A stretch of 64,000 nucleotides of DNA from IMGVR_UViG_3300029922_000001:310001-374000; one strand, 5' to 3'. Shown: positions 1,900 to 25,837, counted from the stretch's first letter. Notes: a model not told the origin generated them from the letters alone. Translations and numbers: made by a program.

Positions 1900-1903
1900 C
1901 TCT

Positions 1904-7258: not shown

Positions 7259-7501
7259 ATGACTCAAATCGAAATTGATAACATCAAATCAGCAAAAGAA
7301 TTAAGGCATGAAGAAATTGCTCAAATTAAGACTCAAATTAATATTCTTAAAAAACAAAAAACAGAATTAGATTTACAAGATAACGCTATACAAAAAGCTA
7401 ATTCCGCAATATGTGACCATACATTACCAAATGGTAAAACAGCTTGGCAAGGTGGTTTTATGTTTAGTATATGTTCTATCTGCGATGACTGTGACTTATA
7501 A
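7259..7501 (+). CDS. hypothetical coiled-coil/zinc-ribbon protein
   Basis: CDH...CSICD; leaderless after TATAAT. Confidence 0.65.
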   Translation: MTQIEIDNIKSAKELRHEEIAQIKTQINILKKQKTELDLQDNAIQKANSAICDHTLPNGKTAWQGGFMFSICSICDDCDL

Positions 7502-8464
7502 TACTTTATTTAATTCATCACAAGTCCATTCAATTGCTGCTAGTGTGTTTAGTTTGTGTTCCCATCTAGTTGGGATTGCTTCATAACCATATATCAATCC
7601 TAAAATATTACCAGCTATAGCACCTGTACTATCTGAATCACCATCATGGTTTACAGCATTGACAACACCTGAAACAAAATCCTTTGATGTTAGCGCACAG
7701 TAAATAGCAATTGCTAACGCTTGCTCACCTATCCAACCTTGACCTAATATATTAAGCATAGGCATATTGAAATCTTTCTTTGCAAAGTTTAAAGCATGTT
7801 TAGAATAGAAGTATGTGTCGGTTTCACCAGTTACACTTTTAAGGTACTCTAGCGTCTGTTCTACAGCTTTAAATGGTTCAGTCTGGTTATCTAATAAGGA
7901 TATCAAATAAGCGAACGCTCCAGCAGAATAAATACCATCAGGGTGGTTATGTGATAGGTTAGCGGCTTCTACAGCAAAATCAAAAGCATCTTCTGGTTCA
8001 AAATATAAACCAATTGGAGCAGAACGCATAACCGCACCACAACCCTTTCTATCATTTGGGATAGGGAATTCAGCATTGTGTTCAATGAGATATTGAAATG
8101 AGGTTAAACACGTATGTCCAGCAGATTTATCTCCCCACATGCTTTGAAATTGTAATAGACCTTTTGTGTGTAATTTAGAATTATATTGTTTCTTTTGAGT
8201 TAAATACCATTTCTTATATTCTTCGCGAACGTTGTTAAGTCTTTGTTCTTCTGAGTCGCATGGCAAACTTAATGCATAAGCAGTAAATAGTGTTAACTGT
8301 GTATCATCAGTAATACAACCATCATCTCCATAAGCTGGGTGAATGTCTGTAATTCCGTTTTCTCCATATTGATTTAATATTTCAGATCGTGATTTAAACT
8401 CAACTGGTGCGCCTAATGCATCTCCAACCGCACCACCCATAATACAAGCTTTGACGTTATTCAT
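7496..8464 (-). CDS. ADP-ribosylglycohydrolase (DraG/ARH family)
   Basis: GGAVGDALGAPVEF, ITDDTQLT, KGCGAVMRSAPIGL, SHNHPDG, VNHDGDSDSTGAIAGNILG. Confidence 0.95.
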   Translation of the reverse strand: MNNVKACIMGGAVGDALGAPVEFKSRSEILNQYGENGITDIHPAYGDDGCITDDTQLTLFTAYALSLPCDSEEQRLNNVREEYKKWYLTQKKQYNSKLHTKGLLQFQSMWGDKSAGHTCLTSFQYLIEHNAEFPIPNDRKGCGAVMRSAPIGLYFEPEDAFDFAVEAANLSHNHPDGIYSAGAFAYLISLLDNQTEPFKAVEQTLEYLKSVTGETDTYFYSKHALNFAKKDFNMPMLNILGQGWIGEQALAIAIYCALTSKDFVSGVVNAVNHDGDSDSTGAIAGNILGLIYGYEAIPTRWEHKLNTLAAIEWTCDELNKVL

Positions 8465-8497
8465 GATATTATTATACGTATAATGGTATAATCAGAT

Positions 8498-9097
8498 ATG
8501 GACACATGGCTTACTGCCGATTGGCACTGCGGAGAAGACAGATTTAAACTTATGGGACGACCTTTTACGTCCCCACAACAAATGATTGATACATTAGTCG
8601 AAAACCATAACAAATTAGTAGCTCCTGATGCACATGTTTATATGTTAGGTGATGTTTGTGCTAGTCAACATCCTGAATATCTGGATCAAGTATCTCGTTT
8701 CAACGGTACCAAGGTTCTTTTGCGTGGGAACCATGATCGCGGAATTTCAGACAAAGAATTCTCACCTTATTTTCAAGAAATCATTCCAGAAGGCGAAGGA
8801 ATCTATATCGAATTTGGTGGTATTGATTGTTATCTAACACATTACCCAACTTGTGGTAAAAAAGACTGTTTTAATTTAGTTGGTCATGTCCATAACGCAT
8901 GGCGAATTCAGCTTAATATGCTTAATGTTGGGGTTGATGCTAATCATTTTATTCCAGTAAATACAAAAGTTATTCCAAGACACATTGAATCACTTGGTAA
9001 TTTCTATGATTTAGATGCTTTTGTGTGTTATGACGACATCAATACAAGTCATTGGGCTACCAGAGGGAAGAAAGAAAAATATTTTAACCGCCAATAG
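8498..9097 (+). CDS. calcineurin-like metallophosphoesterase
   Basis: TADWH, LGDV, LRGNHD, LTHYP, GHVH motifs. Confidence 0.9.
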   Translation: MDTWLTADWHCGEDRFKLMGRPFTSPQQMIDTLVENHNKLVAPDAHVYMLGDVCASQHPEYLDQVSRFNGTKVLLRGNHDRGISDKEFSPYFQEIIPEGEGIYIEFGGIDCYLTHYPTCGKKDCFNLVGHVHNAWRIQLNMLNVGVDANHFIPVNTKVIPRHIESLGNFYDLDAFVCYDDINTSHWATRGKKEKYFNRQ

Positions 9098-9482
9098 TAA
9101 CTTCACCAGAGAAAATAGGTACAGAATCTAAATGAGCCTGAATGCTTGGTGTAAGTGGTCTATTGAATGTACCAATTCCAACATAACTTGGGAACAATCC
9201 TAAATCTGTTGAATCTTGTGCTAATCTTACTTGTTGAGCAAATGTGTTAAATTGTGTTTGTGCGGCAAGTAAAAAGTTCGTATTGAACTTAGCTAATTTA
9301 GTAGAACTATTATCAACGCTAGTGTTGACGTTATAAGATAAATTAACAGTAGAAAAACTATTAGTAAGAGTTTGGGTTAAACTTGTACCAGTATGAGACA
9401 TTGTAAAGTTTACTACAGTTACAACTCCAGTGACGGTTACTGAGTTAATTGTGTAATTAATTGTAATGCTTATATCAGCCAT
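9084..9482 (-). CDS. probable virion protein (Thr/Ser/Val-rich)
   Basis: start MADISIT at 9482 downstream of a class III promoter; beta-rich composition. Confidence 0.6.
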   Translation of the reverse strand: MADISITINYTINSVTVTGVVTVVNFTMSHTGTSLTQTLTNSFSTVNLSYNVNTSVDNSSTKLAKFNTNFLLAAQTQFNTFAQQVRLAQDSTDLGLFPSYVGIGTFNRPLTPSIQAHLDSVPIFSGEVTIGG

Positions 9483-9541
9483 GACTATCATTTCTATATA
9501 ATTGTTTGCATATCCTTTTTCAATGTGGTATACTATCAAAC

Positions 9542-9775
9542 ATGGAACCGACTGAAAGACAAATTAATATACTCAAGCAAGCACCACTTTTTAGAGTGAG
9601 GTATGATGAAAAGGTAGAGCCTTGGGCTGTTACTGTAAAAAATACAATGGTTTGCTGGTGGAAGGAAGTTGAAGAATTGCAGCAACTAGGATTATTGAAT
9701 CCTAGGAATGTTTATGAAGCTGATTTGACGCAAGAGGGGCGAATGTACACATATGATAAAAGTAAAACTAACTGA
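9542..9775 (+). CDS. hypothetical protein
   Basis: leaderless ATG after TGGTATACT; similar to the next ORF (T..Q..IL...P...L...GL). Confidence 0.65.
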   Translation: MEPTERQINILKQAPLFRVRYDEKVEPWAVTVKNTMVCWWKEVEELQQLGLLNPRNVYEADLTQEGRMYTYDKSKTN

Positions 9776-10022
9776 CAAACAAATTGACATTCTAAAAAAT
9801 ACTCCATTAGAGTACTGTGATTCTTCTTGGACAAATTTCGGAATGCATAATAACAAATATGCATTCAATCGTAAAACTGGTCATAGAGTTTACGACTGGC
9901 ACGATGTTGAAGATTTAGAAGAAATGGGATTGTTAAAATTCCATAACCTACTAAGCACTTTAATTGTCGTATTAACTCCTAAAGGAAAAGATGCAATAGC
10001 TGAATCTGTAAGTATAATATAG
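9753..10022 (+). CDS. hypothetical winged-helix-like protein
   Basis: LTDKQIDIL...VEDLEEMGLL...LTPKGK. Confidence 0.6.
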   Translation: MIKVKLTDKQIDILKNTPLEYCDSSWTNFGMHNNKYAFNRKTGHRVYDWHDVEDLEEMGLLKFHNLLSTLIVVLTPKGKDAIAESVSII

Positions 10023-10024
10023 AC

Positions 10025-10345
10025 ATGGTTGGCGGTAAAGTAAAAGAAGTCATTGATTGTGGTAATCTCGTTTGGGTAAACTGCGAAGAGAATTGTTATA
10101 GGATTAGCGGATGTAAAGATCCAACTTGTACTCATGAAGAGTGTGCAGTTTATGTAGAGCGTAATGAAAATTCATTAAAGATTAAAGCAGGGGATAAGTT
10201 ATGGTGGCAAGGTCAAAGCACTTATTGGACACCACAACCTTTCACTAAAAATGAAGAAGATTTAAAATGTGGAATAGATTATGAAATCGACATTCGCAAA
10301 ATGAGTGGTTCAGGAGTTAGTAGACCTGAATTAGTTAGTTGTTAA
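10025..10345 (+). CDS. hypothetical phage protein
   Basis: 106-aa ORF. Confidence 0.65.
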   Translation: MVGGKVKEVIDCGNLVWVNCEENCYRISGCKDPTCTHEECAVYVERNENSLKIKAGDKLWWQGQSTYWTPQPFTKNEEDLKCGIDYEIDIRKMSGSGVSRPELVSC

Positions 10346-10493
10346 GAGTTCCCGATAGTGAGGATCAGCTTAATACGTACCGTTTAAACCGTGGCAAAGT
10401 AAGTGATAGGGAGCAACCTCAATCCTCCGGTATCCCTACCTAGTGGGATGACAACCAGGAAAATAGACTGGTACCGAGGGATATAAGGAGTTT
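10346..10493 (+). ncRNA. GC-rich structured intergenic RNA or leader
   Basis: GTTCCC/GGGAGC, GAGGAT/ATCCTC (crossing), ATCCC/GGGAT, CCAG/CTGG pairings before SD AAGGAG. Confidence 0.4.
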
Positions 10494-10733
10494 ATGGAAT
10501 TAGAATTTAAAGGAACATTTGATGAAGAAAATGATACATTTTTTACAGGTGCAATGAGATACATAGGTTGGGAAGATCCAAATTATCCACTACGTAGTGA
10601 CGGATACATATTAGGTATTCCACTTGAAGAAGTATTTGATTTAAGAAAAGCTGTAATCAATGGTATTACTTTTATTTATCAAGAATCGGAAGAAACGGCT
10701 CAAAAAGCTAGAGAATATTTTGAAGAGGCTTGA
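10494..10733 (+). CDS. hypothetical phage protein
   Basis: SD AAGGAG; 79 aa. Confidence 0.7.
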   Translation: MELEFKGTFDEENDTFFTGAMRYIGWEDPNYPLRSDGYILGIPLEEVFDLRKAVINGITFIYQESEETAQKAREYFEEA

Positions 10734-10760
10734 CAAAATCCAATGAATAAGTGCTATAAT
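10730..10760 (+). promoter_or_regulatory. sigma70-like promoter
   Basis: TTGACA-19-TATAAT (TGC extended -10). Confidence 0.65.
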
Positions 10761-10766
10761 AAATCA

Positions 10767-10983
10767 TAAGCAGGGAACATCTTGAATCGTTCAAGATCTT
10801 TGCTTGCTTAAAGAGAAGTTTCGTACTTTCAGCTTTAAAAAGTGCATAAGGTTAATATAAATAGTATAATGTAAGTTGTTTTTTGTTTTCGCGTTAAAAG
10901 CAAATGGTCCGACATTTCGGAAAGTTTCTTACTTTGAACGTAAAATAAGTGGTGGAGGACCTGCGGAAACGTAGCGTCCCTAG
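10767..10983 (+). ncRNA. structured ncRNA locus B
   Basis: ORF-free region between promoter and terminator; hairpins ATCTTGAA/TTCAAGAT and GGACCTGCG-GAAA-CGTAGCGTCC; second TATAAT near 10865. Confidence 0.55.
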
Positions 10984-11015
10984 AAAAAAGCCTCATAGAA
11001 ATATGAGGCTTTTTT
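10984..11015. terminator. bidirectional intrinsic terminator
   Basis: AAAAAAGCCTCATA-GAAA-TATGAGGCTTTTTT. Confidence 0.9.
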
Positions 11016-11017
11016 CG

Positions 11018-11494
11018 TTATAACTTAAAATTAAGATTAGCAAATTCACCAAATAGTTCTTTAGCTTTATTATCATAAGCTCTCGCAGCATCTTCTTCAT
11101 TGATAAAATATCCTACAAAAATTCTTTTATTATTAAATCCAATTTGTGATTTCCATTTTTTTCTTGATTTTTCCCAATTAACTCCCATGTATTTACTAGT
11201 GCTGTTTTTATTTGAAGATTGATTCATGTGGTTTTGTTGGTGCGTACATAATCTCAAATTATATTTTTCATTATCACAGCCATTATGGTTTATATGATCT
11301 ATGTGAATTTTTGGATTATTATTATTGATAATTAAACGATGCATACCAGTGGTTTTGTGCTTACCATTTTCTTGTTTAATAGAAGTTTCGGCATATCCAT
11401 TATTATTGTAATACCATTTATAGTTTTTGACAAGATCCCAATCTTCATCATCTATAAAAGCAAATTTACCTTTAGTAAGCGATATTTCAATCAT
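11018..11494 (-). CDS. HNH endonuclease with AP2 DNA-binding domain
   Basis: MHRLI...IDHINHNGCDNEKYNLRLCT..QN; SKYMGVNW....KW.SQI......GYF..EEDAARAYD..A..LFGEFA.LNF. Confidence 0.92.
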   Translation of the reverse strand: MIEISLTKGKFAFIDDEDWDLVKNYKWYYNNNGYAETSIKQENGKHKTTGMHRLIINNNNPKIHIDHINHNGCDNEKYNLRLCTHQQNHMNQSSNKNSTSKYMGVNWEKSRKKWKSQIGFNNKRIFVGYFINEEDAARAYDNKAKELFGEFANLNFKL

Positions 11495-11512
11495 AATTTA
11501 TTATAATAATTT

Positions 11513-12289
11513 TTATAATTTATTTTGCATACGATTACATTCATTAACAATTATATTAACAAATTTTTCATTAGTAAAATAATACATATGAGATGTTGGA
11601 AAATATTTACTGATTAGTCCTCCAACGTTTAATTCTATATCAATAATTCTATCATCCTTAGCATAGGCTTGATTAATTTTTTTTATTGGATACCCAATAA
11701 CATCATAATCACTGTAAATATTTAACCATTTAGAAACATTGATGGGTTCACCGCCACCAGTGTTTGCCAAACTCCAAACCAAGATTGGTGAACCAATGGT
11801 GAATAGTGTTTTTAAGCTCTGTAGTGCCTTCTGTGACTTCAAAGAAGCTGTGTAGTATTTATTGCCATCAGAGTCTTTATTCTGTACATCCCAGATAAAA
11901 TTGTTAGTAATAATAGTTCCTAAACTATGTCCTATCCAAAGTAAAACACCATCATCGCCAAGCCAGTCACTAGCTTCACTTAACACAGAATCAACTCTTT
12001 GATGAATGGCACTATAAACATCATTAGTAGTGTCAGATAATTGATAAGCAACAGCATCGCCAACAAATTCAATCATAAACATACGCAGTGTTTTCCAACC
12101 TAAATTAACAATTTTACTATCTAATTGATCTTCAGTAGTGCGGACTAAATCTTTCCAAGAACAAGGGAAGACTTTAAGTTCTACATTGGTAAGATCCTTA
12201 GTTTGAGATTCTAGCAAGGTTACAAACTCGTTAGCGAAGTCAGGACCGTTATTACCGATACCATGTATAGCAAAAATAGCGATTTTCAT
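11513..12289 (-). CDS. alpha/beta hydrolase (lipase-like), late gene
   Basis: IHGIG, GHSLG nucleophile elbow, TIGSP, D.IGYP, SHMYY; class III promoter. Confidence 0.8.
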   Translation of the reverse strand: MKIAIFAIHGIGNNGPDFANEFVTLLESQTKDLTNVELKVFPCSWKDLVRTTEDQLDSKIVNLGWKTLRMFMIEFVGDAVAYQLSDTTNDVYSAIHQRVDSVLSEASDWLGDDGVLLWIGHSLGTIITNNFIWDVQNKDSDGNKYYTASLKSQKALQSLKTLFTIGSPILVWSLANTGGGEPINVSKWLNIYSDYDVIGYPIKKINQAYAKDDRIIDIELNVGGLISKYFPTSHMYYFTNEKFVNIIVNECNRMQNKL

Positions 12290-12342
12290 AATTTTATGTT
12301 CGATTTAACAGGTTATTTATCCTTAATTTTTAAAAAATAATT

Positions 12343-13026
12343 ATGAAAACTATAATTGCAGAAGTTATGTTATTGGCAAAAGAGTTTGATGAAAATAATA
12401 TGACATATCAAGCTGATGCAGTTGATCAAATTACACACGCAATTCTTGCTCAAATAGATTGGAGTAAACATAGAAAACCTGGACAATTAGAAAAAGAAAA
12501 TAATGCTTTAATAGATAAAAATTTAGATTTAAACGTTCGTCGTAATGAAAATACATTAGCTAATTCAACTGTGTTGAATTATTTTATTAACGGTCACGCA
12601 CCTACTCAAGAACAAATTGAAAAACTAATCAAAGATAGAACTGTTACACAAATGCAGAAAATAAGTGATGTTATTAATTTGTATGGAACACAGGATCAAA
12701 AAACAAGAAGATCACAAACAGTTAAATCTGTTATGTTTGAAGAAGAAGAAAAAAAGAAACTAAAGGGTGTGGACAACAATAAACTAAAATTAAAAATCCA
12801 AAAATTAACCAGTGAAGTAAAGAATATTATCGCAGACATTCGCGCTCTTACTCAGAAAATTAATTTACCAGTTTATAGAGATAAGAAAAATCAACTCCTT
12901 AGCGCCATCGAAGAGAAAAAGTTATTAGTTGAACAGATCAACGATAACATACAGATATTAAAGAATTTATTAATACCTGATACTAATCAAAGTAAATTCT
13001 TTGAGCCTTTAGTTCTAACGGGCTAA
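12343..13026 (+). CDS. probable virion protein with shared N-terminal leader motif
   Basis: LAKEFDENNMTYQADAVD...LAQ leader; coiled coil. Confidence 0.7.
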   Translation: MKTIIAEVMLLAKEFDENNMTYQADAVDQITHAILAQIDWSKHRKPGQLEKENNALIDKNLDLNVRRNENTLANSTVLNYFINGHAPTQEQIEKLIKDRTVTQMQKISDVINLYGTQDQKTRRSQTVKSVMFEEEEKKKLKGVDNNKLKLKIQKLTSEVKNIIADIRALTQKINLPVYRDKKNQLLSAIEEKKLLVEQINDNIQILKNLLIPDTNQSKFFEPLVLTG

Positions 13027-13232
13027 TAATCGACAGTGCAGTTATCCTTTTTTGTATATAGAGCAAATGGCACACCATTAACCATACCCACAAAAATACT
13101 ACTATTACAAGTTTGTTCTTTTGAACAATTACAATCCAACGAAGGGAAGCTAAACAAAGATTTTAAGATTTTTTTCATATATTCTCCAATACGGTACAAC
13201 TCTGTGGAGAAGCTACTTTGCTTACTTATATA

Positions 13233-13526: not shown

Positions 13527-13538
13527 ACTTTATTGTAC

Positions 13539-15371
13539 TTAGAATGTAAACCCTTCGGTTTTAGCCTTGGCGATTGTTGGATTATCAATTGGGCTAGTTC
13601 CTGTTCCGGTGTTACCGGTGGTTCCATTTGGCTCAATGCTGCCAGTTTGGGCAAGACTTCTAGAAGCTTGATATTTCTTTGTTGCTGCTATTGTTTCTGG
13701 TCCAATAATACCATCAATAGCGACTGGGAAGCCTTTATTAGTTAAGAATGTTTGCCATTGTTGAATGGTTGGTTTTTTAACGAATGGTTGTGCTTGACTT
13801 GTTGATCTATAGCTTTGTATTTGTTGATTGTAGTTCATTGCAAATTGTGCAAATTGAGGATTTCCATCAACGCTACCAACCAACCAAGGATATTTAGTTC
13901 TTAATTGAGGTAATGCATCTCTAAGTTTAATACCTTGTTTACCCATTGCAACCGCTTCTTGAACGGCTTGTGCCACGACTGGTGTCATTGGAGTGTTCAA
14001 AGACATATTGTTAGTATCTCTTATGTCTTTATGTTGTTGACTTTGTGGAACGACTGTTTTACCAAGAATGTCTAAACCACCACCAGTATCACCAGCAAAT
14101 TGTGCTAATTCAGCACCTTGATCTGCTCCAATACCAATAACACCTAAAGCACCAGCAATAGGTTGTAAACCAGGAATAATAGCTGAAATACTACCAAGAA
14201 AGTTTGCAAAAAATCCAATAAATTTAGCTCTTGTATATGCATCATTAGCTAAATCAATTTCTCCACCTTGAATTTTTTGACACCAACTATACGCTTCTGG
14301 AACCTGCATAATTAAACCAATAAAAGGTAAATATTTAGTGAATTTACTTAAAGCATTTAAGGCTGGCATAGATGCGCTAATCTTAGCTAATGCATTTGAA
14401 ATTACACTAGCAACTTCTGAATTTTTAGTTGCCGCCGCAGCAGCTTTATCTAATTCACCAGCAACATTACTAAGATTTTCAGCTTTGGCACTTAAACTAG
14501 CAATTTCTTGTGCGGCTTGAGGGTTATTCATTAATTCTGCATTATTTTTTAAAGCTTGTAGACGTTGAATAGCGGCTTGTTGTGCTTCTGGATTATCAGT
14601 TTTATTTAAGTCTTCTGCGATACTTGTTGCCCAATTTTGCTGTTTTAAATCTCCAGCAGCATTTGTAGTATTTGTGGCATTAGCAGCGGGAGTTGCAGCC
14701 GCATTAGCGGCAGGGGCAAGTTGTGTTAATGCTGCATCTGCTTGAGATGCAGCTTGTGTTGCAAGTTGTGTTTCTTGCGTGATAGCTTGTGCTAATTGTG
14801 GATTAGCTTTATATACTAATAGAAATTCAGGATCTTGAGTGGCTTTGGAAACAATTTGTGCTCCAATTTTACTAGCTAGAGCATTCATAACCAGGCTTTC
14901 ATTGCTTCCCATACCTCCAGCCGCAAAAAAAGCTATAGCTTCTCTAGAAATATTAACGCCCCGTTGTAACCATTTTTCTAAACCTACAGCATTCTTGTTT
15001 TTCATTAAATTGTAAAAAGATGGATATTTTTTTAATAATAAAGCTTCTACGTATTTTAATAATTCTCTAGTTGCCACACTTCTGGCTAGTCCACCTGGAT
15101 TATTCCAATCACCAAAAGCAATTTTAGAACCCAGATCAGTTAGGCTTTCACCTTGTGCTGGTGTACCTTTTGGCATATTTGGATTTAATAAAATATTAGA
15201 ATTCCCACCTGAAGGATCTATATTTTGTGTAGGTGAAATCATTGATGGCGATTGATTGAATGCGTTATTTGGATCAAGGAATCTTTGGGCAGTACGAATC
15301 ATATTGCGATCTATTTCATCAGCAAGGTGGTGAAATCCATTTTTATCTAAACTTCTAGCAATACTATCCAT
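13539..15371 (-). CDS. large probable virion protein with C-terminal peptidoglycan-binding domain
   Basis: leader IARSLDKNGFHHLADEID...TAQ; Ala/Gln-rich body; IQQWQTFL..KGF....DGIIGPETIAATKKYQ...L..TG. Confidence 0.75.
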   Translation of the reverse strand: MDSIARSLDKNGFHHLADEIDRNMIRTAQRFLDPNNAFNQSPSMISPTQNIDPSGGNSNILLNPNMPKGTPAQGESLTDLGSKIAFGDWNNPGGLARSVATRELLKYVEALLLKKYPSFYNLMKNKNAVGLEKWLQRGVNISREAIAFFAAGGMGSNESLVMNALASKIGAQIVSKATQDPEFLLVYKANPQLAQAITQETQLATQAASQADAALTQLAPAANAAATPAANATNTTNAAGDLKQQNWATSIAEDLNKTDNPEAQQAAIQRLQALKNNAELMNNPQAAQEIASLSAKAENLSNVAGELDKAAAAATKNSEVASVISNALAKISASMPALNALSKFTKYLPFIGLIMQVPEAYSWCQKIQGGEIDLANDAYTRAKFIGFFANFLGSISAIIPGLQPIAGALGVIGIGADQGAELAQFAGDTGGGLDILGKTVVPQSQQHKDIRDTNNMSLNTPMTPVVAQAVQEAVAMGKQGIKLRDALPQLRTKYPWLVGSVDGNPQFAQFAMNYNQQIQSYRSTSQAQPFVKKPTIQQWQTFLTNKGFPVAIDGIIGPETIAATKKYQASRSLAQTGSIEPNGTTGNTGTGTSPIDNPTIAKAKTEGFTF

Positions 15372-18187: not shown

Positions 18188-18763
18188 TCATGAGTAAATA
18201 ACTTCGTTTTTGATAGCTATTATTGATTTTTCTAACTCTTCTATTGTGTCGTTATTGTAGAAAACGCGATCAGCTTTTTCAATTTTTTCTTGTAATGGCA
18301 TTTGCATTGAAATCCATTTTAATGCAGTTTCTTCATCGTATTTATTGCGTTCCATTAGTCGTTTTATCTGTATTTCAGGATCACAAGCAACTAGCCAACT
18401 TTCATAATATCTTAGATATTGACCAGTTTCAAAAAGTAAAGGATTTTCCACAAATAAGGCTGTACTGTTTGAAATACGCAAATTAACTAGAGGATGAACA
18501 TAGTGTTCTATTTCTTTTTTAAATTCTTTGTTGCCTATTAGAGATTTAATTTGATCTTTAGAAAATGGAAAGTCTATATCAGGATTGTATTTTTTCATCA
18601 TCATTACAATTGGATTGGTAATAAATTCGTTTTCATATAACTTAGTAACAATTTCATCTGCGGAAATGACATTTTCCTTTCCAAAATGCTTTGCTAGGAG
18701 GGCTAAGAATGTGGATTTGCCACAGCAAATATTACCAGAAATAGCTATTTTGTGTGAAATCAA
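18188..18763 (-). CDS. coaE: dephospho-CoA kinase
   Basis: IAISGNICCGKST, SADEI, HPLV, ENPLLFE, QIKRLMERN, QMPLQEKIEKAD.VF.N. Confidence 0.9.
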   Translation of the reverse strand: MISHKIAISGNICCGKSTFLALLAKHFGKENVISADEIVTKLYENEFITNPIVMMMKKYNPDIDFPFSKDQIKSLIGNKEFKKEIEHYVHPLVNLRISNSTALFVENPLLFETGQYLRYYESWLVACDPEIQIKRLMERNKYDEETALKWISMQMPLQEKIEKADRVFYNNDTIEELEKSIIAIKNEVIYS

Positions 18764-20058
18764 AGTTGTTGCTCCAAATAACGGTTTACATAAGATGGTA
18801 CAAATTCTTTGCCTTTACCTAACATAGCTAGTTCTCTCACGAGCGAACTACTAACATAAGAATCTTCGATATTACAAGGAATGAAAATGGTTTCTAGATT
18901 TGGATTAATAGCTTTGTTTGCCATAGCTAACTGTAGTTCACCTTCAAAATCACCAATTGGGCGTAATCCACGAATTAACGTATTACAGTTAATTTGTTCA
19001 GCATATTTTGCGACATAACCACTAGTTGTATCTACTGTAATTCTTGGATACTTTAAGCATTCTAGAGCCACTAAAATCTTTCTAATATTCTGTGTAATCT
19101 GAGCAGTCTTTTTAGGATTATCAGCAATTAAGATAAGAACGTTATCAAAAATCTTAGTTGCCTTGTTCGCAATGTGTAGATGTCCGTTGGTGATTGGCAT
19201 GAAGCTACCCGCATAAATACATTGTGAATATACTGGTGAATATACTTGTGGACATTCTAGGTAAGGATCATTAAGGAAGGTTAAAGCGGCTTGTTCCCAA
19301 CGTATACAGTGTTTTGGAAGTTGAGCTACACGAGGGATATATAATTCAATTTCACTAAGAATCAAATCAGAATCACCTAGTAGATTGTCAATTTCCCAAT
19401 CAAGATTTTTCTGAAATTGCTCATTTAAGAAACTCAATTGTTGGAAGTAATATGACTTCATCTTGTTCAAAAATGCTAAACGACCTTTGCGGTATTCGCC
19501 ATTGGAACAATAGCTATATTCAGAACGAATAGATTTTGCATAATTAACATAATTGTCATTGTCTGCACCTAAAATTGCTAGATCGCATTCCATGAATAGT
19601 CTAGCGTAGGCAGGGGCATAAGATGGTAAAAGATCGTGTGTTTTGGTGTACATAATCAAAGGAATAGCACGATCTAAAATAAGACTAGTATCAGTAGCGT
19701 TAATATTTAAAGCGGATAAAAATTCCATTAACGCTTCACAACTAGCTTCTTCATTGTCGGTATTCCCAGCAACACATATTTGATCATGAAATAGAATGGC
19801 TAATAGCGGAATATAGTAACTTACAATTGGATTACCCATATTGGTCTTGTGGTTTGCTTCGTACATTTTGTACATATCAAAAACATGGTCATTATTGTGA
19901 TATGGCAGTGGTGCCTTCTTTTCAAGAACATCTCCAATGAGATTTCTGATTGTTAACTGATCCAATTTTGGATTTAGACAGTGTAAGAAGTCAATGACTT
20001 CTTTAGCGTGTGACGCGACTGTATAGCTATTATTTCTTGGTGTTTTAGTATAGACCAT
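18760..20058 (-). CDS. coaD: HD-domain phosphohydrolase fused to phosphopantetheine adenylyltransferase
   Basis: N-term YHN..HV, FHD, DLAILG..Y..YA..IRSEY; C-term IYAGSFMPITNGHL, LIRGLR...DFEGELQLA..NK, YVSSSLVRE. Confidence 0.88.
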   Translation of the reverse strand: MVYTKTPRNNSYTVASHAKEVIDFLHCLNPKLDQLTIRNLIGDVLEKKAPLPYHNNDHVFDMYKMYEANHKTNMGNPIVSYYIPLLAILFHDQICVAGNTDNEEASCEALMEFLSALNINATDTSLILDRAIPLIMYTKTHDLLPSYAPAYARLFMECDLAILGADNDNYVNYAKSIRSEYSYCSNGEYRKGRLAFLNKMKSYYFQQLSFLNEQFQKNLDWEIDNLLGDSDLILSEIELYIPRVAQLPKHCIRWEQAALTFLNDPYLECPQVYSPVYSQCIYAGSFMPITNGHLHIANKATKIFDNVLILIADNPKKTAQITQNIRKILVALECLKYPRITVDTTSGYVAKYAEQINCNTLIRGLRPIGDFEGELQLAMANKAINPNLETIFIPCNIEDSYVSSSLVRELAMLGKGKEFVPSYVNRYLEQQL

Positions 20059-20071
20059 GTATCTAGTATAC

Positions 20072-20713
20072 TCAATCCTTTGGGCATTGTGGTTTGTAAT
20101 GAATCACTTTAACGATATTTTCTTTTCGTAAAACTGGGAAAACAGCTTGTAATAACAACTCACGATTATTACCATTTAAATATTCAGAGGATTGAATAGC
20201 CTCAAGATCAAAGATTTGATACCAGGATTTTCTTTTCAATTCTTCACCTTGTGCTTTGATTTCTTCAGTAATTACAGTACGTTGAAAGTCTTTTCTATCA
20301 GAAATGTTGATATTGTAATAGGTTTCATAGAACAAATCATCATCTTCACGAGTTAAAGAACAGTGGCTACCGTTTAATACAGAGTGCCATGCTCCATGAT
20401 CTGAAATCAATACTTCACACTCAGGAATATCTAACTCTATTAAGACAGTATCTTCACCATGAAAACGATAGCGCCAACTTCTTAAATCTGGTCTTTTAGC
20501 AAATGCCCACCATAAATCGCCTTCCACTTCAATGCCGCGTAGTTCAGTGAAAACTTCTTTCATCCATTTATATGGTTTTTGAAATCCTTCAGAAATATGA
20601 CCATTTGGAAATTCAAATTCCCAATTATCACCTTTACTAGCGTCTGCTAATAAAAATGTTTTTTCATTGACAAGATCAACAATGTGTTTAGGCTGAAAAC
20701 TCCAAACTTTCAT
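20072..20713 (-). CDS. DUF3841-like protein
   Basis: MKVWSFQP...Y.WM...WWAF..RPDLR...LIELDIPE.EVL.SD..AWH.VLN...QAVF..L. Confidence 0.75.
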   Translation of the reverse strand: MKVWSFQPKHIVDLVNEKTFLLADASKGDNWEFEFPNGHISEGFQKPYKWMKEVFTELRGIEVEGDLWWAFAKRPDLRSWRYRFHGEDTVLIELDIPECEVLISDHGAWHSVLNGSHCSLTREDDDLFYETYYNINISDRKDFQRTVITEEIKAQGEELKRKSWYQIFDLEAIQSSEYLNGNNRELLLQAVFPVLRKENIVKVIHYKPQCPKD

Positions 20714-20771
20714 GCTGATATTGTACCACGTTCATAGGATTTAATGTTTTAACTGTAGAATATAAAGCTAT

Positions 20772-23700
20772 ATGTGGTATCGTTTAGCAAATCCAAATTT
20801 CAAAAAAACAGTACAGCAATTCATTAAGCCAAAAGTTAATAACACTTGGATGAATTCTGCTCCTGTTCAACCTGCTCAACCACCAGTACAACCACCAGTA
20901 CAACCACTAGTACAAACACCAGAACAAACACCAGTACAAACACCAGTACCTGTTAATAAAAATTCGCAATTATATGACAGTGTTATGAATCCTCCAGCAG
21001 CTAATTCTGTTGCTACACCAAGTAGAACACCTATCAGTGATAAGCTTCAATTACTTAAAAGTGATGGATATAAATTACAACATGATGATTACAAAGTTAT
21101 TAATGACAGTGATGGCGGTAATAATTACAGTGATGGCGATTCTTATTCTAATGCTGATAGTGATGGACAACCTTCAAAATATTTAACGAATAAGATGTAT
21201 GAGCAAGATCCACTTGACCCAGAATTATTAGAATTATTCAAGGCTTTTGGCGCTTATGATCAAGAGTATGAAGATAAAACGAAGTACGACGTAAATTATT
21301 CAAATTTCTCAAAGAAAATTGAAGACTACAAAACATCTCAAGATCCAAAACTATTAGAATCGCTCATGCAATATGATAAGGACACTACTTTACATAAATT
21401 GACTAACACCGTTGAGTTGTGTTATGAGTTTCCTGACTTAGTAAAACAAAGAATAATAAGTTCTAGTCTTAGTGGTTTAGATACCTTACCTAAAGGTATT
21501 CTTACCCCAGAATTCATGATCAATTTTATTCAAGAAGGTAACCCTATAATAACTAAAGATGGTCTTAGTTTAGTCGGAAAAACCATGTCAATGATTTATC
21601 ATCACAAAGTTGAATCAACTCCAGAGTTGTTAAATACTTGTTTACAGAATGATTTTAATAAAACTTTGGGGTGGATGACTTCGGACCAAAAAGAACAAGT
21701 TAATTTGATGCAATATGTAGATGGTATGGATTTGAGCAGTATGCAATATTTGCAACCTGAACAAATTGATCAGATTTCACCAGACCAATGGGAAAAAATG
21801 ATTAGTAAAAATCCTAGCGATCTTCAATATGTAGGTTCTCAAATTAAAGATAAAATACCTAAAGAAATCATAAATAAATACTTAACTCCAGATATTATTA
21901 GAAATTTATCTTACAATATCTATCCATATTTGAATTTAGAAAGTCTTGATAAATTAAGAGATACTTATCCAAGTTTTTACACTGATCTTATGCGTTATTA
22001 CTATGATTATCTTGATGATTCAATATTGAAGGTTGCCATATCACAATTTAAAAAATGGTTGTATAGCCCAGCGGGATTGAAATATGCACCTATAGATTCA
22101 ATGAATTCATATATGTTTAACAAGCTAAGTAAAAAACAACAAAAAATGATCTTGGAACATGCGCCATACCAAAATATGTCTCATTACATTAAAACACTAT
22201 TAACTCCTGAACAAATTTTTGCAAAAGAAAAAGAATCAGGTTTTAAAGACGTGTTACATGAAGACTTGTACCCTAAGTTTAGTCCAGAACAATTAAAAGA
22301 ACTGATTCTTGCTAGTCCAATATATCTTGCTCAACTACCTTGGGCTCAAGCACAAAGTTTAGGTATGGGATTTTACAAACAGTTATTAGCTAAAGATATT
22401 AAAAATTATTCCAGAATACCACTTTCAATTAAAATTAAAATGGGTAAAAGTGTATTTAAAAATATTAAGGTCGCGCAAATACCTTATATTGCTAGTCAAT
22501 TACCTGCTGAAGTTATTGAAAAATTAAGCGATAAAGAACGTGACTACATTTTAGATAGAGCGGTTAAATATGGCACAGATTTACCAGCCCAACTTTGGGA
22601 ATATGCTAAAACACCTGCTCAAGAAGCAAAACTTTTTGCTTCTGAACCATCCGTTCAAAGTGTCCCACATGACAAACAAGAGAGCTATAGTGAGCATTTA
22701 GAACAAAAATATGGAGCCAACTTACCTGAATTTTTCAAGAAACTTGATATTGAAGCAAATTTCTCTTCGTTCTATCGCGCTAATCCTGAAACTAAATCAA
22801 ATTTTAATGCCGCATTCAGACAAGAATTTGGACATGGACCTTATATTGATATTCATAGTGTGTTAGATTCTTGGGATAGTGGATATAAACGTACTAGTAG
22901 CACAAAACAATTACTATACGCTGCCAATAAAATAGTTGGTAAAACCAGTGCTGTTGATCAAGAAAATTTTGATAATACGGACGGTTATGACGGTTATGAT
23001 GTTGTCAATGATTTAGAAGGCACAGAAACCTTAAAAGAATTAGAGTGGGGATTAAAGAAAGTATATCAAAATACACAAGACATGTTTAGACAAATGGGCA
23101 TCACTCATATTCCTATTGCTAGATTCAAAGGTGTGTCTATTGAAAATTTAGATAAACGTTTTCCACCAGAAATTGCCAATCAGATTCGCGCTAAATTACA
23201 ACTTAAAAAACCTTTTATGTTAACCTTCCAAAACGCCCCAATGAATGAAAGAGTTATGGCAAGTGCTACGTATAATCCTAATGCGATTTGGAGTTCTTTT
23301 GGTGGATCTAAAGGAAGTAAATCATTAAGTGTTAAGGTCTTCGCTAATGTGCCTGTAGAAAACATTATGGCTGCAAAAAATTCTTGTATGTTAGATGATC
23401 ATAGTAGTGAAGATGAAGTTATTATTTTTAACACTTATGATTTACCTTGTACTTTGGTCATTACTTATGGTTATATAGATGTAAATTCTTCTAGCTACAG
23501 CGAAGTACACTCTAATATTTTAAAAAGCATTGGAGATAAAAAATTCTTTAATAAAGCAGAAGTTCCATACACTGAGTTTACTAAGAATAATATCTTCGAT
23601 ACTCAGCCTAAACCAGAACACAAACCAAAACCTACTGAAACACCAAGAGCCAAAGCGGATAATGAATTACCTGATTTAAGTGGTGTAGAAGGTGGAATTG

Positions 23701-23858
23701 AACTACCTGATTTAAGTGGTGTAGAAGGTGGAATTGAACTACCTGATTTAAGCGAATTGTCTAATTTCGATGATGATTCAGAGGACAGTGATTCAGAAAA
23801 TGAATTACCTGATTTAAGTGATGAAGAACTCTTAAAAGAGTTTGGTGGTGATGAATAA
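20772..23858 (+). CDS. large probable virion protein, WY leader, ART-like C-terminal domain and acidic repeat tail
   Basis: MWYRLA; IPIARFKG/ASATY/SEDEV; paralog of the next ORF; class III promoter. Confidence 0.75.
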   Translation: MWYRLANPNFKKTVQQFIKPKVNNTWMNSAPVQPAQPPVQPPVQPLVQTPEQTPVQTPVPVNKNSQLYDSVMNPPAANSVATPSRTPISDKLQLLKSDGYKLQHDDYKVINDSDGGNNYSDGDSYSNADSDGQPSKYLTNKMYEQDPLDPELLELFKAFGAYDQEYEDKTKYDVNYSNFSKKIEDYKTSQDPKLLESLMQYDKDTTLHKLTNTVELCYEFPDLVKQRIISSSLSGLDTLPKGILTPEFMINFIQEGNPIITKDGLSLVGKTMSMIYHHKVESTPELLNTCLQNDFNKTLGWMTSDQKEQVNLMQYVDGMDLSSMQYLQPEQIDQISPDQWEKMISKNPSDLQYVGSQIKDKIPKEIINKYLTPDIIRNLSYNIYPYLNLESLDKLRDTYPSFYTDLMRYYYDYLDDSILKVAISQFKKWLYSPAGLKYAPIDSMNSYMFNKLSKKQQKMILEHAPYQNMSHYIKTLLTPEQIFAKEKESGFKDVLHEDLYPKFSPEQLKELILASPIYLAQLPWAQAQSLGMGFYKQLLAKDIKNYSRIPLSIKIKMGKSVFKNIKVAQIPYIASQLPAEVIEKLSDKERDYILDRAVKYGTDLPAQLWEYAKTPAQEAKLFASEPSVQSVPHDKQESYSEHLEQKYGANLPEFFKKLDIEANFSSFYRANPETKSNFNAAFRQEFGHGPYIDIHSVLDSWDSGYKRTSSTKQLLYAANKIVGKTSAVDQENFDNTDGYDGYDVVNDLEGTETLKELEWGLKKVYQNTQDMFRQMGITHIPIARFKGVSIENLDKRFPPEIANQIRAKLQLKKPFMLTFQNAPMNERVMASATYNPNAIWSSFGGSKGSKSLSVKVFANVPVENIMAAKNSCMLDDHSSEDEVIIFNTYDLPCTLVITYGYIDVNSSSYSEVHSNILKSIGDKKFFNKAEVPYTEFTKNNIFDTQPKPEHKPKPTETPRAKADNELPDLSGVEGGIELPDLSGVEGGIELPDLSELSNFDDDSEDSDSENELPDLSDEELLKEFGGDE
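23664..23820 (+). repeat. 36-bp coding tandem repeat (ELPDLSGVEGGI) with partial copies
   Basis: GAA(T/C)TACCTGATTTAAG at 23664, 23700, 23736 and 23802. Confidence 0.9.
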
Positions 23859-25837
23859 TGATTTGGTATAAACAAGCATCAAATATCGAACCTCAAGAAC
23901 CTGTTGAGGAAATAATAAAACCATTACCTGTTGAGGAAATAATAAAACCATTCGTGCAACCTACACCAATACAACCAATACAAGAAACACCACAGCCACA
24001 AGATGAAATTAGTGCAACTGTGGATACTGTATTAAAAAACCCTTTAGAGTTTGCTTGGTTACCAATTCAGACTAAACAGGCAATAGCAAATCCTTTAGCG
24101 TTAGCTTTAGTTAATAATGGACAGAGCGTATCTTTTGATATTCAGAGACAGTTAACGGATAAAGGTGTTAGTGATATATATAATATTGATCCAATGTTTG
24201 TTTTTATCAATATTCATGTATTTCGATTAACTAAAGAAGAAAAGCGAAAATATATTTTACCTTTATTTCCACAGGTTTATACTGGTAGTAATATAGTAAA
24301 TATGCCATATAACACATGGGGTTTATTAACAACCGAAGAACAAATTGATTACCTTGAAAGCCATATGAATAATTACAAATTCTTCCCTTCATTTTTAAAA
24401 TTAGAAGCTGGACCAACCTTTGCATGGCAACATTTATTACAGACAAACTTTGCAGACAAGGTACCTGGTGAAATAATTGATGAATTTACGCCTGAACAAT
24501 TAAATATTATTGCTGAAAAAGATCCTGGTATGTTGAAATCAATGTCATTAACTGCTCTTAATAAAATAGACGATGCACATATCGAAGCATATTTTGCTAA
24601 TCATTTTTCTAATAAATATCAAGACGCTAGTGGAAATTTAAAAATAAGATATGGTAATAAGATTTTAGATCAAATAATGGACCCTAAATTGTATGGTGTT
24701 TCATATGCGATTGGTGCGATACCTGCTGCGGTTATGGCACAGGCAACCCAAGAACAAAAAGATAGAATGGCTACTCTATTGGAGCAAAAACCAGAATTAT
24801 TAAAAATAAATCATGAACTATGGGGTGTAATCTCAGAAGAGAAATTACCAGAATTTTTCAATAAAGATCCAGATGCTGATTATATGCCCGAAGAAATTCA
24901 AACTAAATTTTTAGCATTTTTTAAGCATAAGTATAACTTAAATTTACCTCAATACTATGATGATGAAAAGCTACAGAGTGCAATAAAAACATACTATGGT
25001 GATCATAGTGATATAGCTTTAGATGATAAATATCCGAATGATCCAACTAGTAGGTATATTAAGAACACCCTTGGACAATGGGATAGTGGCTATAAAAATG
25101 AAAATGTATTATTAATACATATTGCTTCTGCAATATGTAAACCTAATCCATTAGATGATGAATTATCTATGGAATATACCAGTGGCTGGAATGATGATAA
25201 AATAATTAACGGAGAAGCTACTGATAAAGTTAAGGAAAAGGTGTTGTGGGGTATATCACAAGTTCATAAGAATACACAGCAATTTTTTAAAGTTATGAAT
25301 ATGAAAACAATACCACTAGTGCGATATCGCACTGTTAGTGTTCATAACGTTGCCACTAGATTTTCTCCCGAAAATACAAAATTGATTATGGAACACTATC
25401 AAAAAGGTAAGCCTTTTATGCTTACCTTACAGAATCAGCCAATTCAAGCTAGAAGCTTAGCTAGTTTTTCTTATTCACCAATTGCTGTCTGGAATGGTTT
25501 TGGACTCAGTAAGGGCGAATACACAATAAGCATTAAAGAATTTGTTGAAATGCCAGTAGAGAATGTTTTGGCACTACACGGTTCTGTTATGTGTAAAGAT
25601 TTGCCAGAAGAACATGAGGCTGTTGTTATTGATGGTTATGGACTTCCATGTACCATGATAGTCATGTATGGTTATGACCATTCTAAAAATAATCCAGATA
25701 CAGACGATAGTGCAGACCCTAGATACTATCATGACTTAAAAGCATTTATTGAACAAGATTGTCAAGACAAGCGTGATATTGATTTTTATGGAATGAGACA
25801 AAAATTAATAGATGCACCCAATGTTATTGGGTCTTAA
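23858..25837 (+). CDS. probable virion protein, WY leader, ART-like C-terminal domain
   Basis: MIWYKQA; IPLVRYRT/ASFSY/EEHEA; aligns by eye with the 20772 C-terminal domain. Confidence 0.75.
   Translation: MIWYKQASNIEPQEPVEEIIKPLPVEEIIKPFVQPTPIQPIQETPQPQDEISATVDTVLKNPLEFAWLPIQTKQAIANPLALALVNNGQSVSFDIQRQLTDKGVSDIYNIDPMFVFINIHVFRLTKEEKRKYILPLFPQVYTGSNIVNMPYNTWGLLTTEEQIDYLESHMNNYKFFPSFLKLEAGPTFAWQHLLQTNFADKVPGEIIDEFTPEQLNIIAEKDPGMLKSMSLTALNKIDDAHIEAYFANHFSNKYQDASGNLKIRYGNKILDQIMDPKLYGVSYAIGAIPAAVMAQATQEQKDRMATLLEQKPELLKINHELWGVISEEKLPEFFNKDPDADYMPEEIQTKFLAFFKHKYNLNLPQYYDDEKLQSAIKTYYGDHSDIALDDKYPNDPTSRYIKNTLGQWDSGYKNENVLLIHIASAICKPNPLDDELSMEYTSGWNDDKIINGEATDKVKEKVLWGISQVHKNTQQFFKVMNMKTIPLVRYRTVSVHNVATRFSPENTKLIMEHYQKGKPFMLTLQNQPIQARSLASFSYSPIAVWNGFGLSKGEYTISIKEFVEMPVENVLALHGSVMCKDLPEEHEAVVIDGYGLPCTMIVMYGYDHSKNNPDTDDSADPRYYHDLKAFIEQDCQDKRDIDFYGMRQKLIDAPNVIGS

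What the first reader, a model, noticed from the sequence alone, without database searches (positions are those of the whole stretch)
7496..25837. Writer/eraser ADP-ribosylation pair: two late ART-like proteins plus an ARH
Seen: an intact DraG/ARH-family hydrolase (7496-8464) and two tandem late proteins whose shared C-terminal domain shows R, S-x-T/S and ExE in ART order. Known: T4 Alt is a virion-packaged Arg-ART that modifies host RNA polymerase, and ARH enzymes remove Arg-ADP-ribose. Inference: the phage injects ARTs and later reverses the mark, giving a timed switch. Alternatively, the ARH counters host ART defences.
Basis: inference. Interest (0 to 1): 0.6.

Follow-up and report, generated by a model that had tools for sequence, protein, structure and literature searches.

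The report
Divergent phage ADP-ribosyltransferases plus a separate ARH
A 441-kb phage from peat encodes two tandem proteins ending in a very divergent ADP-ribosyltransferase domain that database scans miss, and an intact ADP-ribosyl hydrolase 12 kb away, but nothing yet shows that the hydrolase and the transferases work as a pair.

Summary
The sequence features are real. ORF 7496-8464 (-) is an intact ARH/DraG-family hydrolase: Pfam E 6e-68, with the metal-binding motifs aligned to DraG.

ORFs 20772-23858 and 23858-25837 (+) are paralogues. Their C-terminal ~220 residues have no Pfam, PHROG, PADLOC or PDB sequence match. Two AlphaFold models of these domains nevertheless retrieve only R-S-E ADP-ribosyltransferases at the top of 48,161 PDB chains (Z up to 5.8). 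Arg, Ser-x-Ser/Thr and Glu-x-Glu are invariant in all 8 known homologues.

The family is tiny: 5 clusters among 1.84 billion representatives. A distant relative is gp258 of Bacillus phage SP-15, annotated as hypothetical.

The catalytic positions in the 659-aa protein nearly coincide with those of T4 Alt (682 aa), although no sequence similarity to Alt is detectable.

Both proteins begin with M(x)WY[KR]xA. So do the zeta-like kinase encoded just downstream, an InPase, and about six other proteins. I take this to be a shared sorting signal, possibly for capsid packaging.

"Late" expression, injection and the writer/eraser link are not shown. The ARH is 12 kb away on the other strand, and the genome also has a second ARH and two macrodomains.

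The parts
7496..8464 (-). ARH/DraG-family ADP-ribosyl hydrolase (P0001, 322 aa), intact
   Evidence: Pfam PF03747 E 5.8e-68. PDB sequence hits: DraG 1.4e-18, Listeria ARH immunity protein 8za7_A 2.6e-16, Tri1 6dre_A 6e-9. Metal-site motifs conserved. Below the DraG and Tri1 equivalog cut-offs. -10-like TATAAT at -12 from the ATG.
20772..23858 (+). ART-like protein 1 (P0002, 1028 aa): N-terminal tag, P/Q-rich linker, helical repeat region, C-terminal ART domain, acidic repeat tail
   Evidence: TATAAA at -11 from the ATG and no Shine-Dalgarno sequence.
20772..20792 (+). N-terminal tag M-W-Y-R-L-A-N of P0002
   Evidence: Shared motif M(x)WY[KR]xA. 8 of 578 gene calls start MWY against 0.37 expected.
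22824..23516 (+). ART domain of P0002 (residues 685-915). Catalytic codons: R784 at 23121-23123, S831 at 23262-23264, E880 at 23409-23411, E882 at 23415-23417
   Evidence: AF2 model pLDDT 73. The top 23 VIA-wide rows are all ARTs, Z 5.5-3.5. BFVD Foldseek E 4e-8. Atlas TM 0.57 to the DraT family.
23858..25837 (+). ART-like protein 2 (P0003, 659 aa); its start overlaps the stop codon of P0002 by one base
23858..23881 (+). N-terminal tag M-I-W-Y-K-Q-A-S of P0003
25040..25717 (+). ART domain of P0003 (residues 395-620). Catalytic codons: R489 at 25322-25324, S536 at 25463-25465, E585 at 25610-25612, E587 at 25616-25618
   Evidence: AF2 model pLDDT 66. The top 18 VIA-wide rows are all R-S-E ARTs, Z 5.8-3.7. 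Atlas structural hit to the DraT family, TM 0.60.
26291..27346 (+). Zeta-toxin-like P-loop kinase (351 aa) with the same N-terminal tag (M-A-W-Y-R-K-A-N); probably part of the same effector set
   Evidence: Pfam Zeta_toxin E 2.5e-15. Tag seen. The neighbourhood is kept in L009 and L010, and a zeta-like kinase lies next to an ART-like gene in L007.
27348..27884 (+). Type I signal peptidase (S26) directly downstream of the kinase. Whether it belongs to the system is uncertain
   Evidence: Pfam Peptidase_S26 E 6e-19. Membrane anchor and catalytic boxes are visible in the translation.

Best explanation
The two tandem genes encode a new and very rare family of R-S-E-type mono-ADP-ribosyltransferases in a 441-kb peat phage.

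Architecture: each protein has a short N-terminal M(x)WY[KR]xA tag, a proline/glutamine-rich linker, an alpha-helical repeat region, and a C-terminal catalytic domain. In that domain the Arg (strand 1) and Ser-x-Ser/Thr would bind NAD+. The Glu-x-Glu at the start of strand 5 would catalyse transfer of ADP-ribose, most likely onto arginine side chains of host proteins.

The tag: it is shared with a zeta-like kinase, an InPase and several unknown proteins. These are the domain types that other phages fuse to head proteins. I therefore infer that the tag is a common sorting signal, and that these proteins are most simply packaged effectors delivered with the DNA, as T4 Alt is.

The ARH: the gene at 7496-8464 encodes an active-looking, DraG-like metal-dependent ADP-ribosyl hydrolase that could remove arginine-linked ADP-ribose. 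It is an independent gene. Its substrate is unresolved: the phage's own marks, host defence marks, or soluble ADP-ribose derivatives.

Shown: fold, motifs, paralogy, intact ARH, shared tag.

Inferred: enzymatic activity, arginine specificity, packaging and injection, and any ART-ARH coupling.
For: Fold:
- Two independent AF2 models (pLDDT 66 and 73) each place only ARTs at the top of a search of 48,161 PDB chains.
- The hits are the Listeria ART toxin 8za7_B, C3stau2, Vis, ART2.2, ExoS, SpvB, C2-I, VIP2, HopU1 and Tre1, at Z 5.8-3.7.
- BFVD Foldseek gives E 4e-8 to 3e-7. The hits include a MuF (head morphogenesis) fusion protein and SP-15 gp258.
- The ESM Atlas gives TM 0.57-0.60 to DraT clusters.

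Motifs:
- R, S-x-[ST] and E-x-E are invariant in 8 homologues at 35-51% identity.
- They lie on strands 1, 2/3 and 5 of the models.
- hhalign to SP-15 gp258 aligns the same three motifs, E 4e-4.

Architecture: the catalytic positions are 489/536/585-587 of 659 aa, against 478/503/574-576 of 682 aa in T4 Alt.

Tag:
- 8 MWY starts against 0.37 expected.
- The tag is kept in distant relatives P0009, P0007, P0132 and P0133.
- Tagged proteins include the zeta-like kinase and an InPase. PMC5512222 describes both domain types in head-packaged or injected polyvalent and MuF-fused proteins.
- PHROG hits of the InPase are 'minor head protein', 'virion structural protein' and 'DarB-like'.

ARH.
Against: - There is no sequence-level link to any curated ART family: Pfam at E<=1, PF03496 and PF18760 absent from the genome, hhalign to T4 Alt at probability 0.4%, and PDB profile search empty.
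- Foldseek against the PDB is not significant. VIA Z values stay below the tool's own caution line of 8, and the models are of only moderate confidence.
- The aromatic residue follows the Arg rather than preceding it, unlike the usual ART motif.
- No structural or head gene is adjacent, and no expression or virion data exist.
- The promoter-class analysis did not establish late timing.
- The ARH is unlinked, and there are four erasers in the genome.
Confidence: 0.6

Rival explanations
1. Timed writer/eraser switch. The ARTs are packaged and injected, and modify host proteins at once. The ARH, expressed later in the same infection, removes those marks.
For: - ART fold with an E-x-E triad, typical of arginine-specific enzymes, together with a DraG-like ARH in one genome.
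- The ARH carries the TATAAT box at -12 seen before replication genes, whereas the ART gene carries TATAAA at -11. The two may therefore belong to different expression classes.
Against: - The genes are 12.3 kb apart, on opposite strands, with unrelated genes between them.
- In relatives, ARH orthologues sit among CinA, Band_7 and RNA-ligase genes, not next to this ART family.
- The promoter classes could not be tied to timing.
- Other erasers are present.
Confidence: 0.2
2. Self-protection. The ARH acts as immunity for the producing cell, as Tri1 does for Tre1 and as in the Listeria ART-ARH pair. It erases marks made by newly synthesised ARTs before they are packaged.
For: - The best structural hit of both ART models is the toxin chain of the Listeria ART-ARH pair, 8za7_B (Z 5.8 and 5.5).
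- The ARH matches that pair's ARH chain, 8za7_A, at E 2.6e-16, and the Tri1 family.
Against: - The genes are not adjacent, unlike known toxin-immunity pairs.
- The ARH lacks the N-terminal extension of Tri1: the alignment starts at model position 70.
- Z differences under 1 are ties, so 8za7_B is not a distinctly better match than the other ARTs.
Confidence: 0.15
3. The ARH is a counter-defence enzyme independent of the phage's ARTs. It would remove host-imposed ADP-ribosylation or degrade ADP-ribose-derived immune signals or by-products of RNA repair.
For: - The ARH belongs to a huge bacterial family: 7,515 hits, about 40% identical.
- Its neighbourhood (C1:300-320 kb) holds a macrodomain, an RNA ligase and a nucleoside 2-deoxyribosyltransferase-like gene.
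- In relatives it sits with CinA and RNA ligases.
- Phage orphan erasers against host ARTs are documented (PMC11825919, PMC13309987). Viral ARG domains have been proposed to act on soluble ADP-ribose derivatives (PMC9503650).
Against: No host, defence system or substrate is known for this phage, and there is no PADLOC match. Known phage examples use macro or NADAR domains rather than ARH.
Confidence: 0.35
4. The C-terminal domains have the ART fold but are not protein-arginine transferases. They could be NADases, or could modify nucleic acids or small molecules, or be inactive binding modules.
For: The fold alone does not fix the substrate. R-S-E relatives include DNA-targeting enzymes (pierisin, Scabin) and enzymes acting on free arginine or agmatine (Vis), all of which appear in the hit lists.
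Against: All three catalytic motifs are invariant across the family, which argues against inactivity. An E-x-E doublet goes with arginine specificity in characterised R-S-E enzymes (established knowledge).
Confidence: 0.2
5. The M(x)WY[KR]xA tag is not a capsid-packaging signal. It could instead be a signal for another compartment, a degradation or processing signal, or a feature tied to translation of leaderless mRNAs.
For: - Many genes in this genome have -10-like boxes at a fixed distance from the ATG, and so look leaderless.
- The codons ATG-TGG-TAT resemble the GGTATA core of the commonest box.
- A signal peptidase gene lies directly after the tagged kinase.
Against: - The tag tolerates an inserted residue (M-I-W-Y, M-A-W-Y, M-P-W-Y) and codon changes.
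- It continues with a conserved Ala at the protein level, in 7 of 11 cases.
- It is kept in distant relatives.
- The tagged domain types match those of packaged effectors (PMC5512222).
Confidence: 0.3

Closest known systems
T4 Alt (head-packaged R-S-E ADP-ribosyltransferase that modifies host RNA polymerase)
   Same: Phage protein of nearly the same size with the ART domain at the C-terminal end. Catalytic residues are R478/S503/E574-E576 of 682 aa in Alt, against R489/S536/E585-E587 of 659 aa here. Both have the E-x-E doublet.
   Different: No detectable sequence similarity: hhalign probability 0.4%. The N-terminal regions differ. Alt lies next to baseplate genes, whereas here the neighbours are CoA-synthesis genes and a kinase. 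Packaging is not shown here.
Bacterial ART toxin / ARH immunity pairs: Listeria 8ZA7, Serratia Tre1-Tri1 (6DRH/6DRE), and DraT-DraG
   Same: An R-S-E ART together with an ARH-family eraser. 8za7_B is the top structural hit for both models, and 6drh_B is also in the lists. The ARH matches 8za7_A, DraG and Tri1. Atlas structural hits go to the DraT family.
   Different: Here the genes are 12 kb apart and on opposite strands. The ARH scores below the DraG and Tri1 equivalog cut-offs and lacks the Tri1 N-terminal extension. The ARTs are large multi-domain phage proteins.
Polyvalent and MuF-fused head-packaged effector proteins of phages (PMC5512222, PMC9503650)
   Same: The same repertoire of effector domains: ART, zeta-like kinase, InPase. 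The best viral structural match of the ART domain is a MuF-domain protein. The InPase matches PHROGs named minor head or virion proteins.
   Different: Here the domains are separate proteins carrying a short common N-terminal tag instead of being fused into one polypeptide or to MuF. The ART is of the R-S-E type, not the H-Y-D type typical of polyvalent proteins.
Bacillus phage SP-15 gp258 (SP15_258, 469 aa, annotated hypothetical)
   Same: Foldseek E 5e-8. hhalign E 4e-4 aligns the N-T-Q-like block, the Arg, the S-S-F-S-Y block and E-A-E. The ART-like domain is C-terminal.
   Different: No M-W-Y tag. Not found by HMMER with the family profile. It is a single gene flanked by terminators, next to a protease gene.

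Membership tests
ART superfamily, R-S-E clade | Split beta-sandwich ART fold | tested here: met
   Two AF2 models. The top 18 and top 23 rows of 48,161 PDB chains are all ARTs, Z 5.8-3.5. BFVD gives E 4e-8. Moderate model confidence and Z below 8 leave some doubt.
ART superfamily, R-S-E clade | Arg on strand 1, Ser-Thr-Ser-like motif on the next core strand, [QE]-x-E before or at strand 5 | tested here: met
   R, S-x-[ST] and E-x-E are invariant in 8 homologues. Strand positions are seen. The aromatic residue follows rather than precedes the Arg.
ART superfamily, R-S-E clade | Match to a curated ART sequence family | tested here: not met
   No Pfam hit at E<=1. PF03496 and PF18760 are absent from the genome. 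No PDB sequence hit.
ART superfamily, R-S-E clade | NAD+-dependent ADP-ribose transfer | not testable with these tools
   Needs a biochemical assay.
Alt/VIP2 family (T4 Alt-like) | Sequence homology to Alt | tested here: not met
   hhalign probability 0.4%.
Alt/VIP2 family (T4 Alt-like) | Packaged in the head and injected | not testable with these tools
   Only indirect hints: the shared tag, effector-type partners, and a MuF-fused structural relative.
ARH / ADP_ribosyl_GH (PF03747) | Full-length family match above the curated cut-off | tested here: met
   230 bits against a cut-off of 26.2, covering profile positions 1-287 of 287.
ARH / ADP_ribosyl_GH (PF03747) | Conserved acidic and Thr residues of the binuclear metal site | tested here: met
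   The three blocks align with DraG.
DraG or Tri1 equivalogs | Score above the NCBIfam equivalog cut-off | tested here: not met
   DraG 92.6 bits against 337; Tri1 51.6 bits against 490.
ART-ARH toxin/immunity or writer/eraser pair | Adjacent or co-transcribed genes | tested here: not met
   12.3 kb apart, opposite strands, different -10-like boxes.
ART-ARH toxin/immunity or writer/eraser pair | Co-occurrence of the two families across genomes | tested here: inconclusive
   Contigs of relatives are too short or not held.

The most novel reading that the evidence does not exclude
M(x)WY[KR]xA is a portable sorting (capsid-targeting) signal of a lineage of huge phages. It marks a set of at least eight separately encoded ejected effectors: two ARTs, a zeta-like kinase, an InPase and several unknown proteins. 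This would be a 'disassembled polyvalent protein'. The phage's own ARH enzymes would serve as built-in antidotes or timers for the ARTs.
Probability: 0.25. Interest if true: 0.7.

Novelty: new member of a known kind. Interest (0 to 1): 0.5.

Why it matters
- It adds an ART family that sequence-based surveys miss, including in the cultured Bacillus phage SP-15, where the relative is annotated as hypothetical.
- It suggests that huge phages may deliver several effector enzymes marked by one short N-terminal tag. If so, the tag would be a handle for finding ejected effectors in uncultured phages.
- The writer/eraser idea is testable with simple NAD+ labelling and co-expression assays.
- As it stands, the ART plus ARH combination in a phage is not new. 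ART-ARG pairs in Aeromonas phages are noted in PMC9503650.

Tried and rejected
- Pfam, PHROGs, NCBIfam and PADLOC scans of the two ART-like proteins gave nothing meaningful.
- tblastn against 50,697 phage records found no match, even at E<=10 for the domain alone. A viral-contig scan found no relative.
- The word search found only one 94%-identical protein. The full library search found 5 clusters.
- PDB sequence and profile searches were empty. hhalign to T4 Alt was negative. Foldseek against the PDB was not significant, though ARTs were enriched among the weak rows.
- Complex prediction of the P0003 ART domain with the ARH gave no answer (score 0.01). This is no evidence either way.
- Timing by promoter class:
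  - Three classes of -10-like boxes at a fixed distance from the ATG were found.
  - The TATAATAA class marks replication genes.
  - The TGTATAAA class precedes giant unannotated ORFs, but also a sigma factor and RNase H.
  - 'Late' therefore could not be assigned.
- Records of relatives could not be searched whole.
- No RNA runs exist for this phage.
- HMMER with the family profile did not find SP-15 gp258. Only Foldseek and hhalign did.
- tblastn of two other tagged proteins gave no informative annotation.
- DUF3841: no paper in the library and no PDB relative.


Full report
**Context.** The window is positions 310,001-374,000 of a 441,498-bp IMG/VR virus record that CheckV rates complete. 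G+C is about 33%. Near-identical DNA occurs in at least eight peat metagenome runs, and no RNA run holds it. No close relative exists among 50,697 phage records.

**The ARH.**
- ORF 7496-8464 (-) gives a 322-aa protein with no stops.
- It matches Pfam ADP_ribosyl_GH end to end, E 5.8e-68.
- It also matches solved DraG (1.4e-18), MJ1187, the ARH chain of the Listeria ART-ARH pair 8za7_A (2.6e-16), ARH1 and Tri1.
- The acidic and Thr blocks that hold the two metal ions in DraG are conserved.
- It falls below the NCBIfam equivalog cut-offs for DraG and Tri1. Its alignment to Tri1 starts at model position 70, so it lacks Tri1's N-terminal occluding extension.
- It belongs to a very large bacterial family of about 40% identity. 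Three closer relatives (52-60% identical) sit on phage-like contigs. There the neighbours are CinA, two Band_7 genes and RNA ligases, and in one case a small gene with a weak ART-PolyVal hit.

**The two tandem proteins.**
- ORFs 20772-23858 (1028 aa) and 23858-25837 (659 aa) overlap by one base. They are paralogues over their last ~440 residues, 27% identity, E 3e-55.
- No Pfam, PHROG, PADLOC or PDB sequence match exists.
- The family is tiny. The word search finds one 94%-identical protein. An exhaustive HMMER search of 1.84 billion representatives finds five clusters.
- Contig L008 carries three tandem copies, and L007 carries one copy beside a zeta-like kinase.
- In an alignment of eight members (35-51% identical), the invariant residues include an Arg in P-x-x-R-[YF], a Ser in S-x-[ST]-[YF], and E-x-E.

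**Fold.**
- AlphaFold2 on the shallow family alignments gave models of pLDDT 66 (P0003 380-659) and 73 (P0002 685-915).
- In both, the Arg lies in the first long strand, the Ser motif in a following core strand, and the second Glu opens the strand after a long loop. This is the layout of C3/VIP2-type ARTs.
- Foldseek against the PDB was not significant.
- The exhaustive VIA search of 48,161 chains put only ADP-ribosyltransferases in the top 18 rows (first model) and top 23 rows (second model). They include 8za7_B, C3stau2, Vis, ART2.2, ExoS, SpvB, iota-like, Tre1, C2-I, Certhrax, VIP2 and HopU1, at Z 5.8-3.5.
- Each Z is modest and below the tool's caution level. The uniformity of the lists for two models is what carries weight.
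- Foldseek against viral models was significant, E 4e-8 to 3e-7. The hits include a protein with a phage head morphogenesis (MuF) domain and Bacillus phage SP-15 protein A0A127AWP2.
- I located the SP-15 protein as SP15_258, annotated hypothetical. hhalign of the family against it gave E 4e-4 and aligned the Arg, the S-S-F-S-Y block and E-A-E.
- The ESM Atlas gave TM 0.57-0.60 to DraT-family clusters.
- I conclude that both domains are ART-fold with an R-S-E triad, confidence about 0.85. They form a family that curated models do not cover.

**Comparison with T4 Alt.**
- Alt (682 aa) has R478, S503-T-S and E574-x-E576.
- P0003 (659 aa) has R489, S536-x-S and E585-x-E587.
- The architecture is the same, but hhalign finds no sequence relationship, probability 0.4%.
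- The region between the linker and the ART domain resembles ALTTAQ/mesothelin-type helical repeats in the Atlas model, TM 0.55. This is a lead only.

**A shared N-terminal tag.**
- Both proteins start with M(x)WY[KR]xA.
- Among 578 gene calls in the genome, 8 start M-W-Y where 0.37 are expected. Three more start M-x-W-Y, and 7 of the 11 have Ala two residues after the Lys/Arg.
- Tagged proteins include:
  - the zeta-toxin-like kinase immediately downstream (26291-27346; Pfam E 2.5e-15);
  - an InPase (PF18823, E 1.8e-39), whose PHROG relatives are named minor head protein, virion structural protein and DarB-like;
  - a 993-aa protein beside giant ORFs;
  - several small unknown proteins.
- Relatives keep the tag: P0009 and P0007, and the InPase homologues P0132 and P0133.
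- ART, zeta-like kinase and InPase are recurrent modules of head-packaged or injected polyvalent and MuF-fused phage proteins (PMC5512222). Phage ARTs are often head-packaged (PMC9503650).
- I therefore read the tag as a common sorting signal, with capsid packaging the favoured reading. This is inference.

**Is the ARH the eraser of these ARTs?** No evidence links them.
- They are 12.3 kb apart on opposite strands, with HNH endonucleases, a peptidoglycan-binding protein and CoA-synthesis genes between them.
- The genome has a second ARH and two macrodomain proteins, and no other copy of the ART family.
- The genome shows -10-like boxes at a fixed distance from start codons. TATAATAA at -11 precedes DNA polymerase, clamp and clamp loader, and the ARH has TATAAT at -12. 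P0002 has TATAAA at -11 without the TG of the TGTATAAA class. That class precedes giant ORFs but also a sigma factor and RNase H.
- The ARH and the ARTs may therefore belong to different expression classes, but 'late' cannot be assigned.
- A complex prediction gave no answer.
- Published precedents exist both for ART-ARH pairs and for orphan phage erasers that counter host ARTs (PMC9503650, PMC11825919, PMC13309987).

**Verdict.** The writer/eraser pairing and the timing remain hypotheses. The thing is a new, very divergent member of the known class of phage ADP-ribosyltransferases. The one unexplained and potentially useful extra is the shared N-terminal tag.

Noticed in passing
window 28837-61597 (23 sites); whole genome C1:340-441 kb: A strong promoter-like motif, TCCCCAA about 9 nt upstream of GAGGTATACT. 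The GGTATA core sits exactly 14 nt before the start codon. There are 117 sites, 109 of them on the + strand, in front of small genes. The spacing implies leaderless or near-leaderless mRNAs.
   Followed up: partly
genome-wide; in the window e.g. 2237, 7259, 8498, 11494(-), 33573, 34626, 40405: A second box, TATAATAA, at -11 from the ATG (39 sites). It precedes DNA polymerase, clamp, clamp loader and endonuclease VII genes. A third box, TGTATAAA, at -12/-13 precedes giant ORFs, a sigma factor and RNase H.
   Followed up: partly
window 43602-43673: A tRNA with anticodon CTA, which reads the amber codon; ARAGORN calls it tRNA-Pyl. TAG is the rarest stop codon among long ORFs, 20 of 297. No recoding was tested or assumed.
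   Followed up: no
window 18188-20713 (-): An operon running divergently from the first ART gene. It holds DUF3841, a phosphohydrolase fused to phosphopantetheine adenylyltransferase (CoaD, above the equivalog cut-off), and dephospho-CoA kinase (CoaE, above the cut-off). These are the last two steps of CoA synthesis, encoded by a phage. The arrangement is conserved in L009 and L010.
   Followed up: partly
window 27348-27884: A phage-encoded type I signal peptidase (S26) with a membrane anchor and catalytic boxes, directly after the tagged kinase. The arrangement is conserved in L009 and L010.
   Followed up: partly
window 23634-23855: P0002 ends in an acidic tail with repeats of E-L-P-D-L-S. 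The relative P0005 is 12 residues shorter overall (1016 aa against 1028 aa), consistent with a change in repeat number.
   Followed up: no
G000:C1:5873-6553 (-), 302009-302356 (+), 179524-179805 (-), 1627-2079 (+): A second ARH and two macrodomain proteins lie elsewhere in the genome. The second ARH is about 4 kb from the tagged InPase, and the same neighbourhood is seen in relative L043.
   Followed up: partly
window 703-1899, 3594-4466, 56926-58086: A tyrosyl-tRNA synthetase, a nucleoside 2-deoxyribosyltransferase-like protein, and one of four RNA ligase genes in the genome.
   Followed up: no
window 5997-6656 (-), 11018-11494 (-): Two HNH homing-endonuclease-like genes flank the ARH region. 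The second carries an AP2 domain.
   Followed up: no
window 13539-15371 (-): A 610-aa protein with a C-terminal peptidoglycan-binding domain and weak endolysin PHROG hits. It could be a lysin or a virion-associated wall-binding protein.
   Followed up: no
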